DNA of 64,000 bases from Syncephalis fuscata S228 (taxonomy: Eukaryota > Fungi > Zoopagomycota), in the NCBI GenBank assembly GCA_025786725.1, contig JAHLTZ010000013.1, positions 124,001 through 188,000 on the forward strand. The letters run 5' to 3'. Made by a program: the position numbers and the translations under genes. Each line of letters starts with the position of its first letter. Within the stretch, counting starts at the first letter, position 1. Below, piece by piece: positions 17,267-23,572 of this stretch. Under the pieces are notes generated by a model. That model saw nothing but the letters and a program-made list of their open reading frames with translations. It ran no database searches and was not told the DNA's origin.

Positions 17267-17516
17267 TTACATCATAAGACGATAGAGACCGGCTGCAATA
17301 AAGCCTAAACGGTCGCTGTTAGCATTGCTGCAGTTGTAAAGATTAGGCTAACGTACCAAGACCTGTGAGGCATAGTCCATTACGGCGGGCCGTCAGATGA
17401 CGCGGCAGTTGTCGGCTTTCCCAAAACAAATAGCCACCAATTCCCGCAAATGCACCTCCTCCAGTAAGACGGCAAGCAACACAATCCTGTTGAGATTTGG
17501 ACGAGGCTTCAGTCAT
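17267..17516 (-). CDS. Small DUF4536/DMAC1-like membrane protein (2 exons)
   Basis: DCVACRLTGGGAFAGIGGY..GFIAAGLYRL; CxxC followed by two Gly-rich TM helices. Confidence 0.8.
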
Positions 17517-18162
17517 TGTAGTTACGTAAAATGTTGAGCACGCAGTTGTAAAAGATACGAGTGCAAATACCATTATTATGGCACTGTGCCAATTTTGACA
17601 CAAATTTACAATATAGAATTTGATATTCGAGTGATATAGCTTGTATAAACTGTCTAGACTCAATATTGGATGCTTATCTAGCATTTCTACATATCAAATG
17701 TGTCATTTGTCCAGTTGAAATGTATCTAAACGATTTTCTCCGCATAAACAAAGGCCTCCATATCAATCTTTCTAAATAGCACGTTTATACTTATAAATAG
17801 ATCATTCAATATAACAGTTGATCAATAAATGCTTGTAATAAACAAACATGCATTAGTATGCTGTGGCCATAGTATAGTAAACAAAAGTTTAATCTACTTG
17901 GACGTTGCAATAAATGATTAAGCATAATGAAATAATAATATCTATTGCACTGATTTGATAACCACATAATTACCATTCAGATCTACAAATCAAAATATAA
18001 TTCATGTGATAATATCAGTGGTAATGATTATCGGACAGATCAGTAGCTTTACACAATCTGAAACAACATCGCTTATCAGTTGAACGATCAAAGACACGGT
18101 TGTTTCTTTCTTCTTCTCGATATTCACAACCCCACGGACAGTTATTCCACCCGTAAAGCACG

Positions 18163-20335
18163 ATGAAATATGCTAAGCAACTAGCGCTCCGGACAATACC
18201 GGCATGGAGTGTCGACTATATCGACTATAAAGCCTTGAAAAAGCAAATTAGCGCAAATATCACGCAACGCGATGGTAAGTAATACTAACACTTTGGCCTA
18301 TATCTCGGTTAAATATAATGTTAAATATAGAAAAAACCCTGGATGACGAAGATAGTAATCTGCTGGCTGACCAGTTTGAGCAAAATATTATAACAGAACT
18401 TGATAAAGTAAACCATCGATATGTGACGCAAGAAAAAGAATGTGCCATTAGACTCGAGGAATTGGATGAACAGGTAAATAGATTGCTATGCAAAAGTAAA
18501 ACTAACCATTTGTTGTTATAGTGGCACGATGATATGACATTGGATGAGCATGATTCATGGTAAGTTAGTTAATATTAGAGTGAATAGGAGATAAATACAA
18601 ATTGCCAGGAAACATTCATTCTCCAAATTATTGCAATCGCTGGAATATGTTGCCGGTAAGTATACGCTGTAGATGAGTGAATATCGCTTATTAACTTTAC
18701 TATTAGACTTTGTTCACACTAATATAACGGGCTTCAAGAAGATTTTAAAGAAATACGACAAGAATTTTCCAGCCATCCAAATGACCGATCGATCTGGCCA
18801 CTTATTCTAAATACACCATTTGCACAGGCCCATAACGATGAAAGACTATTACTACGTGCTCGCCAAGTAAGTTTATTAATATGTGTATTTACTTATATTA
18901 ATTATTTAATAGGTATGGCGACAACATGTACCGCCTGTGCCACACCCGTCAACTACTAAAAAACCTGAAGAATATGAAGAGGATGAAAGCATTGCAGTGG
19001 ATGGCACACCATCAAGATCAGTTTAGAGACAGAAGTTCCAAATATTGAGGATCTAGATTTGGATGCCATGTCCGCCGGCCGTATTACACGTTTATGGGTA
19101 GTTTTAGCGCAAAACGGTCTTGGTGAACCGATTAAAGTACCCGTTATTATAGCCAAAGTAAATAATGTGTTGTTATTAACTGCCACCAATCGTAACTGTC
19201 ATCTATTTGATCTACACTACAATACTTTAGGGAGTACGTCCTGGCCCTATTCTAGGCATTACTGCCGCACTCCATGGCAATGAACTTAATGGCATTCCAA
19301 TTATCCATCGACTACTATCGGAACTGGATTGTGCACAACTGCACGGTATTATACTGGCTGTACCGGTAGCTAACGCACCAGGTTATCTAAGTGGCCAACG
19401 TGGCTACACCGATGGCTCTGACTTGAATCGAATGATGCCTGGGTAGGAATGAATTGTCATGGTTATTCACTCTATACGCCAATTAACTAACTGGCTAATA
19501 TCAATGCTTCATTAGAAAGAGCAATGGTACAGTGGCCCAAGTCTATGCCTATCATTTAATGGAGCGTATTATTGACAAGTGTGACCATTTACTCGATTTA
19601 CACACGGCAAGTCGTGGTCGTATGAACTCGCTCTACGTACGGGCCGATATGAATAATCCACGCACCCACGCCATGGCCCGACTGCAAAATCCCCAGGTAA
19701 TAGCCATCATATAGCCCAAAAGGCGATCTACTAGCTTATCCATTTGTCATTAGATTATTGTTCACAATACTAGTCCTGACGGTTCTCTTCGTGGTGCTGC
19801 TATGGAACGCAATATTGCTGCCATTACTGGTAAATCAATACAATGAACACAAATAGCCACCGCCAAAACTGACAATAATCTAACAGTTGAAATCGGCGAT
19901 CCATCACAGCTTCAAGAACAGTATTTAAAGAGTGCACTACTTGGCGTCACCAATATTATGTCGCATCTTAAAATGATTTCAGCCGAGAAAGATCTACCTG
20001 AGTTTGAGCCAGTTATCTGTTCAAAAAGTGTAAGTCACCTATTAATTTATTTTAATTCTATTGATTTAATTTATTTAATACAGTTTTGGATATTTGCTCG
20101 TACTGGCGGTATTCTCACTGTATTGCATGATGTCAATACGTGGGTACGTAAAGGAGAACCTATCGCCACCGTCCATTCTATATTTGGTCATTTAGAATGC
20201 ACGTACCACTCACCGGAAGATGGTATTATTGTGGGTAAAAACGTCGATCCTGTCTGTCAAAGTGGCAATCGAATTATTCACTTGGGCGTTATTGGTGGCC
20301 AATTTGCTGGCGAATCAAACGATGGTCATTTGTAG
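18163..20335 (+). CDS. SPX domain fused to a succinylglutamate desuccinylase/aspartoacylase (M14-like) zinc hydrolase (about 11 exons; two apparent frameshifts)
   Basis: MKYAKQL..PAWSVDYIDYKALKKQI and NITGFKKILKKYDK (SPX); GVRPGPILGITAALHGNE, DLNRMMPG, LLDLHTAS, ITVEIGD, plus a C-terminal barrel-sandwich hybrid domain (ARTGGIL..VRKGEPIA..SPEDGIIVG). Confidence 0.85.
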
Positions 20336-20974
20336 TAGGTGGCCATTGTGATGATTACGGTTAATTACGGTTGTCAAGTTAAATGTCATTGACATGCAGC
20401 AATCATATGAATTTTTGACTATGTTCTACGTAATCCAATTATACTAATATGTTCACAATCAGTGCTGATAACACCAATAATGCTAATAATAAACTAAGAT
20501 CTTTATTCTTTGTATAATGCACGTGCAGTGAATTTTATTCGGTCTATCTAAAGGCCATTACAAATAAACAAGGGTCTAACTACAACAACAACAAATAACA
20601 AACAGGATCATCAAACCGTATGACCAACTAATTCGCCCGTCTTATATTTCCATCTTTCCTCCTCCAGTATATCCTTATCTTTCTCTTTCTTTTATTCCAC
20701 ACACACACGACAGTAACTAACTCTTTTTCTTCCATGATCGACAATAGTACACGCATAAACATTTGCTTTTATTATCGTCGTGTTTAGCTTCTTTGATTTT
20801 TGCTTCCTGCTGGTCAATTGGCCACTTTTTTTCACCTAGCGCCAGTTACTAGGCTAGTCTACAACAATATACAGCCATCTATTTGCTACTTGTTATTTTC
20901 TTAACACATCACATTTCTATCCACCGGTTTTTGCAGCTTCTCTTGATAACAGACAAATAACACCAATTGCAATC

Positions 20975-23572
20975 ATGGCTGCAGCCGTAGGATCTCCAAT
21001 GCAGATTACTCCTTATGAGCCTGCATCTTTGTTCGGCGTCCAGGCCATGGCCGAAAAGGCAGGCAAATAACCGTAACTACCAACAACTTTGAAATCACCA
21101 ATATGATGAAAGGCAACGTCATTCAATATGACGTATCGATCGAACCGGATGTGAAGCCGCTTATTAATCGACAAGTATTTCAAAGCTTTGAAGATATGAA
21201 CCGCAGTAGTTGGGGTACAGCACTTATGGCCTATGATGGTCGTAAAATTGCATATTCGCCAAAGGAAATGCCATTTGGTGCCGGTTTACGTACTGAGGTA
21301 AGAAATAACTAGTTATGCCATTTTACTTTGGCCCATAAACTGCTTATTTAGATCACGTTACCCGAAGCGGATGGCCGCCCATCACGTAAGCCACGTGTGT
21401 TCACGCTAACAATACGCCGAGTAAGCGAGATCAATCTGTATGAATTGAGCCAGTTCATAGAAGGCAAATGCAAGACGTCGCCGAATATCCACTCATCCAT
21501 TATGTTATATGATATTTTGTTTCGACATCAGCCGGCTCTTCGCTACACGACTGTTGGTCGTTCGTACTATATTGACGAACAGAGCTCATTTACATTGCCT
21601 GGTGGTCTAGTAGCACGTCAAGGCATTTACCAGTCAGTTCGTCCCAGTGCCAATCGCATGATTGTCAATGTCGATATCAGCTCAACGGCTTTTTTGCCCA
21701 CGGCCCTCTTATTGACATTATCTGTCGTGTACTTCACTTGCAGCATCCTGATCAACTACGTCGAGGACTACGTCCTAATGATACATCACGACTTGAGTCA
21801 TACATTAAAGGACTGTCATTCTATGTCACGCATCGTGGCTCTAGCAAGCGTAAATACCGTGCGGCCCGTTTTACAAAAACAGACGCACGTCGTACTACTT
21901 TTCCAATTGGCGATACTAACCAGCAGCAATCAGTTGCCGAGTATTTTAAAATCAAGTACAACATGAATCTACGTTATCCTGAATTGCCATGCATTGAAGT
22001 AAAAAAGAATATGTATTTTCCGCTTGAAGTATGTGACGTTGTTGAAAACCAACGCTGTTCACGTAAACTTACCCCCGAACAAACTGATGGCATGATCAAA
22101 TTCACTACGCATCGTCCCGACAAACGGTTAAATATGGTCCGTGACGGTATTCGTGAATTGAAATATCATCACAATCCACAGCTTCGCGCTTTTGGCGTTC
22201 GCGTTGATGATAGCCGTCCAATTGTGGCACGAGCACGTATACTTGATACACCACGTATCAACTACAATCCAAAGAGTCGCGAAGCTGTTGTGACACCGCG
22301 TGATGGTGTTTGGAATCTGCGCGACAAGATTCTACCAACTGGCGCTGTTTTAGGCAGCTGGGCCGTTTTATGTTTTGCTGATCGTGTCAATCGTGGTCAA
22401 GTAGAAAATTTTATTCGTGAATTGGGATCGGTTTGCCATCGTACAGGCATGAATGTAATTGCTCACCATCCGCCGGTTATGAGCTGCAACCGACAAACAA
22501 TGTTGAGCAAGCAATGCGCAAAGTAAGCGCTGAGGCCGAGCATAAGTTCCGTGCACCACCTCAAATTATTGTTTGTATCTTACCAGATACTTCAGTACCA
22601 TTATACGCAGAAATTAAGCGCGTATGTGAGACTGTTGTCGGTGTGCCTACTCAGTGTATTCTTGGTAAGCATACACAACGACCAGCAGTTCAGTATTGTG
22701 CCAATGTTTGCCTTAAGATGAATGCAAAACTTGGTGGCACGAATGTTACTCTATCGCGTGAACAACTTGGCTTTATCAGTGATAAGCCAACTATCGTCAT
22801 TGGTGCCGATGTATCGCATCCAGCACCTGGCGATGTTACTCGGCCATCAATTGCTACTCTTGTTGGATCGATTGATGCAAATCTAGCTCGATTCAGCTCT
22901 TGTATCCGTATTCAAACAGCCCGTGCTGAAATGATCGGCGATTTACGTGATATGATTGTTGAGCTACTGAAGGCCTTTTATCGTAACACTGGCCATAAAC
23001 CAGCTCGTATTCTCTTCTATCGTGATGGTGTTTCGGAAGGCGAGTTCCAACAAGTACTCGATACGGAAGTTATGGCAGTTAAAGAAGCTTGTTTACAGCT
23101 TGAGCCAAATTACTCACCAACACTAACTTATGTTACTGTGCAAAAACGTCATCATACACGTCTATTCCCAACTCGACGTGAACATTCTGATCGATCAGGC
23201 AATTGCGTGCCTGGTACAGTAGTCGATTCGGATGTCACACATCCATACGAGTTTGACTTTTTCCTTGTTTCGCATTCTGGTATCCAAGGCACATCTCGTC
23301 CTTCACATTACCAAGTACTTTATGATGAGAATGAATTTACGCCGGATAGTTTGCAAGAGCTTACCTACCGCATGTGCTATTTATACGCACGCTGCACTCG
23401 TTCAGTGAGTGTTGTACCGCCCATCTACTATGCTGATATATTGGCGGGACGGGCTCGGTTCCATGCTACTGGTGATAATTTTGGCGATCTTACTAGTCAA
23501 ACTTCGGATTCAACTGCGCCTAGCTATCGCCGCTTACACGAAAGACTACGTGACTGTATGTTCTACATGTAG
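20975..23572 (+). CDS. AGO1: Argonaute (N-PAZ-MID-PIWI); one intron 21298-21351; three apparent single-base frameshifts
   Basis: RRPGHGRKGR..NNF, PAZ (YFKIKYNMNLRYPELPC), NAKLGG, IGADVSHP, YRDGVSEG, QKRHHTR, QGTSRPSHY, YARCTRSVS, MFYM. Confidence 0.97.

What the first reader, a model, noticed from the sequence alone, without database searches (positions are those of the whole stretch)
18163..20335. SPX phosphate-sensor domain fused to a bacterial-type AstE/AspA zinc deacylase
Seen (not visible in the ORF track because of ~10 introns): a minimal SPX domain with intact ligand-binding residues (YIDYKALKK; GFKKILKKYDK), joined to a complete M14-like hydrolase with zinc ligands HGNE and DLH, the DLNR motif, catalytic Glu in ITVEIG, and a hybrid-barrel tail. 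Known: SPX domains bind inositol pyrophosphates and control Pi transporters, VTC polyphosphate polymerase, Pho81, Gde1 and RING ligases. I know of no characterised SPX-deacylase. Similar bacterial AstE/AspA-family genes often neighbour RimK glutamate ligases. Inference: a new output of PP-InsP signalling that couples phosphate status to deacylation or deglutamylation of an amino-acid metabolite or protein tail, possibly built from an anciently acquired bacterial enzyme. Caveat: two single-base shifts lie in the linker, but only ~300 nt separate the domains and I see no separate promoter.
Basis: partly seen in the sequence, partly recalled or inferred. Interest (0 to 1): 0.85.

Follow-up and report, generated by a model that had tools for sequence, protein, structure and literature searches.

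The report
Phosphate-sensor domain fused to zinc deacylase
A fungal gene really does join an SPX phosphate-signal receptor to a bacterial-type zinc amide hydrolase in one expressed protein; the fusion is old, widespread and unstudied, and it travels with an equally unstudied ATP-grasp-like ligase that may make its substrate.

Summary
An RNA-derived contig covers window 18025-20430 and removes exactly ten GT..AG introns. It also carries one extra base at each of the two frame breaks in the genome, so it gives a single 536-codon ORF: SPX domain, short linker, then a full AstE/AspA (DoeB-like) zinc hydrolase with its C-terminal barrel. The breaks are most likely run-length errors of the assembly.

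The fusion is not unique. More than 100 database proteins share it, from chytrids, Zoopagomycota, Mortierello- and Glomeromycotina, Pneumocystis, Saitoella, Balamuthia and Spongospora. All are named only "hypothetical" or "SPX domain-containing", and I found no paper on them. All six PP-InsP-contact residues and all catalytic residues are conserved across 98 fused orthologs.

The nearest bacterial relatives lie in a three-gene cluster: an unnamed ~480-aa protein "A" (no Pfam match; predicted fold resembles ATP-grasp amide ligases), a GshB/RimK-like ATP-grasp ligase, and the deacylase. This genome keeps A but no RimK/GshB ligase was found. A sits beside the SPX-deacylase in Balamuthia and in one other eukaryotic contig.

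My reading is a PP-InsP-gated hydrolase of a small amide made by ligase A. The regulation and the substrate are both untested. I class it as a new variant of a known kind.

The parts
18025..18162 (+). 5' untranslated region, at least as far as the RNA contig reaches
   Evidence: Record 2 of run X1 starts at 18025. The first Met, at 18163, aligns with residue 1 of the orthologs.
18163..18274 (+). Exon 1. SPX N-terminus (aa 1-38), with Y22 and K26 of the phosphate-binding cluster.
   Evidence: Pfam SPX E 5.9e-8, above the cut-off. Joint 18273/18330, cut +1. Residue roles from PMC9911596.
18331..18473 (+). Exon 2. SPX helix 3 region (aa 38-85).
   Evidence: Pfam SPX E 0.005, partial. Joints.
18522..18559 (+). 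Exon 3 (aa 86-98)
   Evidence: Joints 18471/18520 and 18558/18608 in the RNA contig.
18609..18655 (+). Exon 4 (aa 98-114)
   Evidence: Joints. The frame is continuous in the model.
18707..18866 (+). Exon 5. SPX helix 4 with K125, K128, K129 and K132, then the last SPX helices (aa 114-167). Contains the first assembly indel.
   Evidence: Pfam SPX E 8.4e-5. The RNA contig has +G after 18790 and a synonymous A>T at 18771. The corrected frame reads ...IWPLILNTPFAQ..., which matches the ortholog consensus LWPxVxxxxFA.
18790..18791 (+). Single-base gap of the genome sequence relative to the RNA (G versus GG)
   Evidence: table 4. Without the extra base the spliced ORF stops at codon 148.
18913..19157 (+). 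Exon 6. Conserved W-R-x-x motif at the end of SPX, a poorly conserved linker (about aa 173-206), and the first strands of the hydrolase domain (aa 168-249). Contains the second assembly indel.
   Evidence: Joints 18866/18913 and 19157/19231. W168 is nearly invariant in orthologs. Linker conservation is 0.04.
19022..19024 (+). TTT run that reads TTTT in the RNA contig (second frame break)
   Evidence: table 4 (+T behind 19021). The corrected frame gives ...EDLDLDAMSAGRITRLWV..., matching the ortholog consensus LDLxxLPxGxISRxWV.
19231..19442 (+). Exon 7. Zinc ligands H264 and E267 (HGNE) and the substrate-carboxylate motif DLNR (aa 250-320).
   Evidence: Pfam AstE_AspA_cat E 2.4e-14. These residues are conserved in 98-99 of 99 aligned sequences, 98 fused orthologs plus the model.
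19516..19696 (+). Exon 8. Third zinc ligand H349 (DLH) and the invariant S352 and G354 (aa 320-380).
   Evidence: Pfam AstE_AspA_cat E 3.2e-7. Conservation.
19754..19829 (+). Exon 9 (aa 381-406), the most conserved block of the enzyme
   Evidence: Joints. Mean conservation 0.85.
19887..20029 (+). Exon 10. Catalytic E407 (VEIG) and the helix leading to the C-terminal domain (aa 406-453).
   Evidence: E407 is invariant in 99/99. Joints.
20084..20335 (+). Exon 11. C-terminal beta-barrel domain and the stop codon (aa 454-536).
   Evidence: Open to the stop at 20333-35. The equivalent part of ortholog P0157 overlays the C-terminal domain of DoeB and 3na6.
20336..20430 (+). 3' untranslated region, as far as the RNA contig reaches
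   Evidence: The contig ends at 20430 and runs into adapter sequence (tables 7 and 8).

Best explanation
Shown:
- Window 18163-20335(+) is one expressed, 11-exon gene for a 536-aa cytosolic-type protein.
- It has an N-terminal SPX domain (aa 1-~170), a short flexible linker, and a complete AstE/AspA-family (DoeB-like, M14-related) zinc amidohydrolase with its C-terminal beta domain.
- The two frame breaks in the genome are absent from the RNA and are most likely assembly run-length errors.
- The gene belongs to an old, widespread and uncharacterised eukaryotic family.
- All SPX-bearing sequences form one clade. Its nearest neighbours are ~324-aa bacterial-type enzymes encoded next to two genes: a GshB/RimK-like ATP-grasp ligase and an unnamed ~480-aa protein 'A' with no Pfam match.
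- Eukaryotes, this genome included, also keep A. In two lineages A lies next to the SPX-deacylase.

Inferred:
- Protein A is an ATP-grasp-type amide ligase, from a moderate-confidence model and consistent but weak fold matches.
- The enzyme hydrolyses a small N-acyl or isopeptide amino-acid compound with a free alpha-carboxylate, probably the product of ligase A.
- Binding of inositol pyrophosphate or InsP6 to the SPX basic surface (Y22, K26, K129; K125, K128, K132) switches that hydrolysis. This would couple turnover of the compound to cellular phosphate status, as SPX does for VTC, Pho81, Gde1 and XPR1.
For: Transcript:
- A single 1866-nt spliced contig covers 18025-20430. It has all 10 introns removed and carries +G (18790) and +T (19021).
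- This gives a 536-codon ORF with no internal stop.

Domains:
- Exon-wise Pfam gives SPX and AstE_AspA_cat.

Orthologs:
- The model aligns end to end (1-536) with annotated fused proteins: Basidiobolus 57% identity and Neoconidiobolus 59%.
- Most of the 120 listed proteins (of 1956 hits) carry both Pfam domains. Ten re-scanned here all had both.

Conservation over 98 fused orthologs plus the model, 99 sequences:
- Y22 82/99, K26 87/99, K125 90/99, K128 88/99, K129 95/99, K132 87/99.
- H264 and E267 98/99; R316, H349 and E407 99/99.
- The residue roles come from PMC9911596.

Structure of ortholog P0157:
- Mean pLDDT 88, with a helical SPX, residues 175-188 disordered, then the hydrolase.
- Foldseek top hits are DoeB 6twm (TMt 0.81), 3cdx, 3na6 and 2qj8. 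The dipeptidase CphZ scores 0.66.
- PDB sequence hits match XPR1 and Vtc4 SPX domains.

Tree:
- All 42 SPX-bearing rows fall in one clade of 57 rows (SH-aLRT 99). The bacterial short forms lie outside it.

Bacterial cluster A + ATP-grasp + deacylase:
- Found in Saprospiraceae-like contigs, another metagenome lineage and a cyanobacterial MAG.

Protein A in eukaryotes:
- A full-length copy in this genome at G000:C57:404217-406103, 45-58% identical, plus a paralogue.
- Adjacent to the SPX-deacylase in Balamuthia, and in ENA eukaryotic contig L027.
- A is present in 17 genera that also have the fusion, Pneumocystis among them.
- A's model matches only ATP-grasp amide ligases among the top 50 listed hits. 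The language-model neighbours are GshA, GSP_synth and YheCD/TTL.
Against: - No biochemical datum exists for any member. PP-InsP binding, the direction of regulation and the substrate are all inferred.
- The RNA evidence is an assembled contig, not raw reads. It cannot exclude an additional internal start, and it could come from another strain (one synonymous SNP, at 18771).
- The only DNA run (X2) does not cover the two indel sites, so 'assembly error' versus a true strain-specific frameshift is not formally settled.
- The fold assignment for A is moderate: mean pLDDT 71, TM 0.3-0.43.
- A is adjacent to the fusion in only 2 of 6 eukaryotic loci examined, and not in this window. The co-occurrence lists are truncated at 120 hits each.
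- Mucorales appear in the A list but not in the truncated deacylase list.
- NCBIfam scores sit far below every equivalog cut-off (DoeB 66 vs 402.7 bits), so no known substrate can be transferred.
Confidence: 0.62

Rival explanations
1. Two separate genes: a small stand-alone SPX protein that ends at the TAA at 18808-10, and an independent deacylase starting at the Met in ...DAMSAGR... The reader merely read them together.
For: The genome sequence alone has a stop after codon 147 of the spliced frame and a second frame break at 19021-24. A Met lies just upstream of the hydrolase domain.
Against: - One spliced RNA contig runs across both parts, including the intron inside the linker region (18866/18913). 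It carries the two extra bases that make a single ORF.
- The corrected frames reproduce conserved ortholog motifs on both sides of each break.
- Over 100 orthologs are annotated as single fused proteins.
- Neighbouring transcripts lie on the opposite strand (table 8).
Confidence: 0.03
2. A recently decayed pseudogene. The two frameshifts are real in this strain, the RNA contig comes from another strain or haplotype, and the protein is not made here.
For: The RNA contig differs from the genome by a SNP at 18771 as well. The DNA run X2 does not cover the indel sites (table 8). Stop-bearing copies of other genes exist in this genome.
Against: - All three indels seen in 4 kb, including +C at 21026 in the neighbouring Argonaute gene, are one-base undercalls of a base run. 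All fall in expressed exons.
- 164 first-reader notes on this genome mention frameshifts, which fits a systematic assembly artefact.
- Apart from the two indels the coding sequence has no stops or substitutions at invariant positions.
Confidence: 0.07
3. The fusion is real but acts on proteins. It would be an SPX-controlled carboxypeptidase or deglutamylase trimming C-terminal Glu or Asp tails written by a RimK-like ligase, rather than a small-molecule deacylase.
For: Bacterial relatives neighbour RimK/GshB-type ATP-grasp genes. The fold is M14-related, and distant Foldseek hits include the tubulin deglutamylase CCP5 and the carboxypeptidases.
Against: - No RimK or GshB-type ligase was found in this genome.
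- The close structural relatives all act on small N-acyl or isopeptide amino acids: DoeB, AstE, ASPA and CphZ, at TMt 0.66-0.82. CCP5 and the carboxypeptidases reach only about 0.35-0.5.
- The retained partner A resembles glutathione and glutathionylspermidine synthetases, which are small-molecule ligases.
Confidence: 0.12
4. The SPX domain here is a structural or oligomerisation module, or a plain Pi/polyanion binder, that does not convey PP-InsP status. The hydrolase would be constitutive.
For: No binding data exist. The AlphaFold model gives no confident SPX-hydrolase interface (pTM 0.62, linker disordered). Linker charge is only weakly conserved.
Against: All six residues that contact InsP6/PP-InsP in Vtc4 (PMC9911596) are present. 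They are kept in 82-95 of 99 aligned sequences over very deep divergences. That is hard to explain without ligand binding.
Confidence: 0.15

Closest known systems
SPX-controlled enzymes of the INPHORS pathway (Vtc4 SPX-TTM polyphosphate polymerase; Gde1 and Pho81 SPX-ankyrin-GDPD)
   Same: An N-terminal SPX domain with the Y22/K26/K(i+4) phosphate-binding cluster and the K(i)/K(i+3)/K(i+7) lysine surface cluster, placed in front of a catalytic or regulatory output on one polypeptide.
   Different: The output here is a soluble zinc amidohydrolase of the AstE/AspA family. It is not a phosphate-handling enzyme, transporter, CDK inhibitor or RING ligase. No link to phosphate chemistry is evident from the catalytic domain.
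DoeB/EutE N-alpha-acetyl-L-2,4-diaminobutyrate deacetylase (PDB 6twl, 6twm) and structural-genomics relatives 3cdx, 3na6, 2qj8
   Same: Best structural match over the whole hydrolase, including the C-terminal beta domain (TMt 0.79-0.82). Same HxxE...H zinc site, NR carboxylate clamp and catalytic Glu.
   Different: Only about 20% identity. The NCBIfam DoeB equivalog score is 66 bits against a cut-off of 402.7. There is no ectoine-pathway context. It has an added SPX domain and is eukaryotic.
Bacterial three-gene cluster: protein A + GshB/RimK-like ATP-grasp ligase + ~324-aa AstE/AspA-family deacylase (e.g. P0254, P0258, P0260, P0082)
   Same: The catalytic domain is about 51% identical. Partner A is 45-58% identical to a gene in this genome. 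The A-deacylase adjacency is kept in Balamuthia and in contig L027.
   Different: The bacterial enzymes lack SPX. Eukaryotes appear to have dropped the GshB/RimK-type ligase. The cluster itself is uncharacterised.
CphZ cyanophycin-dipeptide (beta-Asp-Arg) hydrolase, aspartoacylase ASPA, succinylglutamate desuccinylase AstE
   Same: Same superfamily and the same chemistry on small N-acyl or isopeptide amino acids with a free alpha-carboxylate.
   Different: More distant: TMt 0.54-0.68. The NCBIfam AstE and ASPA models score far below their cut-offs.

Membership tests
SPX domain (Pfam PF03105) | Profile match at the N-terminus of the protein | tested here: met
   Exon 1 scores 33.6 bits against a cut-off of 27.8. 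Exons 2 and 5 give partial hits. The genome search gives 51.1 bits for the frame neighbours combined. Full-length orthologs score 36-71 bits.
SPX domain (Pfam PF03105) | Phosphate-binding cluster (Tyr22, Lys26, Lys on helix 4) and lysine surface cluster (three Lys at i, i+3, i+7 on helix 4) | tested here: met
   Y22, K26 and K129, plus K125, K128 and K132, are present. They are conserved in 82-95 of 99 aligned sequences. The pattern is as given for Vtc4 in PMC9911596.
SPX domain (Pfam PF03105) | Helical hairpin plus long three-helix bundle fold | tested here: met
   Tested on ortholog P0157, which is 59% identical and colinear. Its AF2 model has helices 3-171 at pLDDT about 90. Sequence matches to the solved XPR1, Vtc3/4 and PHO1 SPX domains. 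The joined window protein itself was not folded.
SPX domain (Pfam PF03105) | Binds InsP6 or PP-InsP and transmits this to the fused output | not testable with these tools
   Needs ITC or MST and enzyme assays.
AstE/AspA zinc amidohydrolases (Pfam PF24827; M14-related) | Profile match of the catalytic domain above the gathering score | tested here: met
   Exon 7 scores 53.8 bits and exon 8 scores 30.5 bits, against a cut-off of 25.
AstE/AspA zinc amidohydrolases (Pfam PF24827; M14-related) | Zinc ligands HxxE and a downstream His; catalytic Glu; Asn-Arg carboxylate clamp | tested here: met
   H264, E267, H349, E407 and N315-R316 are present. They are invariant or nearly so in 99 sequences and align with the same motifs of 3cdx and 3na6.
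AstE/AspA zinc amidohydrolases (Pfam PF24827; M14-related) | C-terminal beta (hybrid-barrel) domain | tested here: met
   The ortholog model overlays the full length of DoeB, 3cdx and 3na6 (aligned 327-337 columns, TMt about 0.8). Window exon 11 aligns with that region.
DoeB (NCBIfam TIGR02994 equivalog) | Score above the equivalog cut-off (402.7 bits) | tested here: not met
   Orthologs P0157 and P0153 score 66 and 65 bits. This is not a DoeB ortholog, so the substrate cannot be transferred.
AstE (TIGR03242) / aspartoacylase (NF002601) equivalogs | Score above the equivalog cut-offs (305.65 / 180 bits) | tested here: not met
   21 and 30 bits.
RimK-linked deacylase module | A RimK/GshB-type ATP-grasp ligase partner in the same genome | tested here: not met
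   PF08443 gives only weak hits in unrelated long ORFs: 24 bits in a 1240-aa frame, and one below the cut-off. PF02955 gives none. The bacterial neighbour protein gives none. This is 'not found with these queries' in a 371-contig assembly, not proof of absence.
Ligase-A + deacylase module (defined here) | A homologue of the ~480-aa protein A in the same genome | tested here: met
   G000:C57:404217-406103(-) covers A residues 2-505 at 45-58% identity. There is a paralogue on C198.

The most novel reading that the evidence does not exclude
The SPX-deacylase and the unnamed ATP-grasp-like ligase A are the two halves of a synthesis/hydrolysis cycle, taken over from a bacterial operon, for a still-unknown amide metabolite. 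One candidate is a conjugate of a basic amino acid or polyamine. Inositol pyrophosphates would gate the hydrolytic half, making this a new metabolic output of eukaryotic phosphate signalling. It is retained even in the reduced genome of Pneumocystis. One possible role is supplying or removing organic counter-ions in step with polyphosphate synthesis.
Probability: 0.25. Interest if true: 0.8.

Novelty: new variant of a known kind. Interest (0 to 1): 0.62.

Why it matters
SPX domains are the receptors through which eukaryotes read inositol-pyrophosphate (phosphate-status) signals. The known outputs are transporters, the VTC polyphosphate polymerase, Pho81, Gde1, PHR-binding SPX proteins and RING ligases.

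An SPX-gated zinc amidohydrolase would add an output in amino-acid or amide metabolism that nobody has studied. It is conserved across chytrids, Zoopagomycota, Mucoromycota, Taphrinomycotina (including the pathogen Pneumocystis), Amoebozoa (Balamuthia) and Rhizaria.

This work makes it testable. It supplies a verified gene model and the residues to mutate. It also supplies a candidate partner enzyme, ligase A, which has no Pfam family and whose product is the obvious first place to look for the substrate.

Tried and rejected
- **Alternative splicing to bypass the frame breaks.** No GT donor lies between 18765 and 18810. The RNA contig uses the 18866/18913 joint and simply has an extra base at each break.
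- **Two-gene model and pseudogene model.** See the rival explanations.
- **RimK-type partner in this genome.** Searched with PF08443, PF02955 and the bacterial neighbour protein. Nothing convincing was found.
- **Ligase A or an ATP-grasp gene inside the 64-kb window.** None.
- **Conserved A adjacency.** Absent within 10 kb in Neoconidiobolus, Pneumocystis jirovecii and Fonticula.
- **Acidic linker as an intramolecular pseudo-ligand for the SPX basic surface.** The window linker is net -5. Across 94 sequences the median is only -2, and 63% are net negative. This is too weak to claim.
- **Literature.** 'SPX domain' combined with succinylglutamate desuccinylase, aspartoacylase, deacylase or PF04952; SPX + inositol pyrophosphate + carboxypeptidase + domain architecture; and RimK + succinylglutamate desuccinylase. 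Zero relevant papers; the one hit concerned the GPI inositol deacylase Bst1.
- **Pfam and NCBIfam on protein A.** No hit, even at E = 5.
- **Handling of the joined model.** Those searches were run exon by exon by reference, or on orthologs returned by the searches. The joined model was built only inside local scripts, for alignment with fetched proteins and for the tree.
Full report
**1. What is in the sequence**

Reading 17600-20900 in three frames gives an 11-exon gene on the + strand. The exons are:
- 18163-18274
- 18331-18473
- 18522-18559
- 18609-18655
- 18707-18866
- 18913-19157
- 19231-19442
- 19516-19696
- 19754-19829
- 19887-20029
- 20084-20335

All ten introns are 46-74 nt long and GT..AG.

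Exon-by-exon Pfam scans gave SPX (PF03105) on exons 1, 2 and 5, with exon 1 above the gathering cut-off. They gave AstE_AspA_cat (PF24827) on exons 7 and 8, both above the cut-off.

The genome sequence alone breaks frame twice, near 18790 and at 19021-24. The spliced genome-only frame therefore stops at codon 148. The gene is single-copy in a 29.4-Mb, 371-contig assembly.

**2. Transcript evidence**

The look-up of sequencing runs returned two runs of the same organism. When laid on 17400-21400, run X1 behaves as RNA.

One 1866-nt contig covers 18025-20430 and skips exactly the ten predicted introns. Its 3' end runs into adapter sequence. Relative to the genome it has:
- +G after 18790
- +T in the TTT run at 19022-24
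- a synonymous A>T at 18771

With these two bases the spliced model is a single 536-codon ORF with no internal stop. The corrected frames reproduce motifs that are conserved in orthologs on both sides of each break: IWPLILNTPFAQ versus LWPxVxxxxFA, and LDLDAMSAGRITRLWV versus LDLxxLPxGxISRxWV.

A third insertion of the same kind, C to CC at 21026/27, appears in the neighbouring, oppositely transcribed Argonaute gene. In addition, 164 first-reader notes on this genome mention frameshifts. I therefore read the breaks as run-length undercalls of the assembly.

Two caveats apply:
- The evidence is an assembled contig, not raw reads.
- The only DNA run does not cover the two sites.

**3. The architecture is real, old and widespread**

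Only exons were searched by reference; the joined model was never sent to a search tool.

Exon 7 against 1.84 billion cluster representatives returned many long proteins in which the match lies 180-560 residues from the N-terminus. Ten of these were re-scanned, and all carry SPX + AstE_AspA_cat.

I then took the Ambispora protein P0004 as query. Most of the 120 listed proteins (out of 1956 hits) have both Pfam domains. They come from:
- Glomeromycotina
- Mortierellomycotina
- Basidiobolus
- Neoconidiobolus
- Massospora
- Kickxellomycotina
- many chytrids
- Saitoella
- four Pneumocystis species
- Balamuthia
- Spongospora

A Symbiodinium-like sequence (P0007) also carries a below-cut-off SPX match. 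None of these proteins has a functional name.

In local scripts the transcript-based model aligns 1-536 with full-length orthologs, for example 59% identity to Neoconidiobolus 1-518 and 57% to Basidiobolus 1-517.

Conservation over 98 fused orthologs plus the model, 99 sequences in all:
- SPX contact residues are kept in 82-95 of 99. They are Y22, K26, K129 (phosphate-binding cluster) and K125, K128, K132 (lysine surface cluster), with roles as given for Vtc4 in PMC9911596.
- H264, E267, R316, H349 and E407 are invariant or nearly so.

An IQ-TREE 'quick' tree of 108 catalytic domains puts all 42 SPX-bearing rows in one clade of 57 (SH-aLRT 99). The non-SPX rows inside that clade are mostly partial fungal gene models. 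The window protein sits next to Neoconidiobolus, Massospora and Basidiobolus, which suggests a Zoopagomycota-like host. Short bacterial-type forms lie outside the clade.

**4. Fold**

The AF2 model of ortholog P0157 has mean pLDDT 88. It shows:
- an all-helical SPX domain at residues 3-171
- a disordered stretch at 175-188
- an alpha/beta hydrolase plus C-terminal beta domain at 205-504

Foldseek places the hydrolase on DoeB (6twm, TMt 0.81), 3cdx, 3na6 and 2qj8 over their whole length. More distant matches are the cyanophycin-dipeptide hydrolase CphZ (0.66) and AstE (about 0.57).

Sequence searches of the PDB match the N-terminus to the SPX domains of XPR1, Vtc3/4 and PHO1.

The NCBIfam equivalog models for DoeB, AstE and aspartoacylase are all missed by a wide margin. 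The family is certain; the substrate is not.

**5. Context that bears on function**

The closest bacterial-type enzymes are about 51% identical to the window's catalytic domain. They sit in a recurring cluster with two other genes:
- a GshB/RimK-like ATP-grasp ligase (PF02955/PF08443, below every equivalog cut-off)
- a soluble ~476-508-aa protein, here called A, which has no Pfam or NCBIfam hit

The cluster is seen in Saprospiraceae-like contigs, in another metagenomic lineage with a different gene order and in a cyanobacterial MAG.

In the window's own genome I found no convincing RimK- or GshB-type ligase. I did find a full-length homologue of A at G000:C57:404217-406103(-), covering residues 2-505 at 45-58% identity. 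There is also a paralogue on C198 and two stop-bearing copies.

A is adjacent to the SPX-deacylase in two eukaryotes:
- In Balamuthia, A lies immediately downstream on the same strand.
- In a 629-kb eukaryotic metagenome contig, A lies head to head with the fused gene.

It is not within 10 kb in Neoconidiobolus, Pneumocystis or Fonticula.

A search with a eukaryotic A exon lists A in 17 genera that also appear in the fusion list, Pneumocystis among them. It also lists Rozella, Mucorales and Endogone. Both lists are truncated at 120.

The evidence on what A is:
- Its AF2 model is of moderate quality (pLDDT 71, pTM 0.75).
- Foldseek matches only ATP-grasp amide ligases among the top 50 listed hits: a putative gamma-Glu-Cys synthetase 3k1t, eukaryotic glutathione synthetases, glutathionylspermidine synthetase, and YjfC/YgiC. 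E-values go down to 4e-8, but TM-scores are only 0.3-0.43.
- Language-model neighbours point the same way.

**6. Mechanism**

Shown:
- The gene encodes one expressed fused protein.
- Both domains are under purifying selection.
- The enzyme shares ancestry, and sometimes gene adjacency, with ligase A.

Inferred:
- The hydrolase cleaves a small N-acyl or isopeptide amino-acid compound. The N315-R316 clamp implies a free alpha-carboxylate, as in DoeB, AstE, ASPA and CphZ.
- That compound is most simply the product of ligase A.
- PP-InsP binding to the SPX surface sets the activity.

The direction of control, the oligomeric mechanism and the physiological role are open. A counter-ion role alongside polyphosphate is pure speculation.

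**7. Novelty and score**

The sequences are already in public databases with both Pfam domains, so the architecture is not a discovery of this window. However, five targeted literature searches found no description of it. The ligase-A link appears to be unannotated everywhere; every hit is 'hypothetical'.

I class the finding as a new variant of a known kind: an SPX-controlled enzyme with a new output. I score interest at about 0.6. The reasons:
- It is confirmed, conserved and testable.
- It has a concrete partner gene.
- It has no functional data.
- A further SPX architecture is not in itself a great surprise.

Noticed in passing
window 21026-21027 (gene at about 20711-23572, minus strand): The RNA contig of the neighbouring Argonaute gene has an extra C here relative to the genome.
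   Followed up: partly
G000:C57:404217-406103(-) (L021 3718-5604) and G000:C198:9224-11098(-) (L022): Two apparently intact genes for an unnamed ~480-aa protein with no Pfam hit. Its predicted fold resembles ATP-grasp ligases. They are 45-58% identical to the bacterial operon partner of the deacylase. The ORF holding the first exon of the C57 copy stays open for about 176 codons upstream of the match, with no Pfam hit.
   Followed up: partly
G000:C57:367230-368152(+) and G000:C81:3328-4244(+): Further copies of the ligase-A family, at 30-45% identity, with several in-frame stops in the six-frame matches. They may be pseudogenes, intron-rich paralogues or assembly-damaged genes.
   Followed up: no
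proteins P0028, P0038, P0050, P0094: Relatives of the same deacylase carry an N-terminal HutD domain (PF05962) instead of SPX, in proteins of 676-817 aa. They form their own clade. This is a second, different fusion of the enzyme. Their organisms were not identified.
   Followed up: partly
L023 12740-13847 (Neoconidiobolus thromboides): A spermine/spermidine synthase gene lies directly downstream of the SPX-deacylase ortholog. This may be coincidence, but it is worth recalling because ligase A resembles glutathionylspermidine synthetases.
   Followed up: no
window 17343-17698, minus strand: A separate expressed gene on the opposite strand: an X1 contig of 1014 nt covers 17400-17698. It bounds the SPX-deacylase locus upstream. 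It contains a 113-aa ORF with a hydrophobic, Gly-rich stretch.
   Followed up: no
P0246 / L026 (Fonticula alba): The Fonticula homologue (771 aa) has a 450-residue N-terminal extension without a detectable SPX match. It groups inside the SPX-bearing clade, so it is either a very divergent SPX or a replacement.
   Followed up: partly
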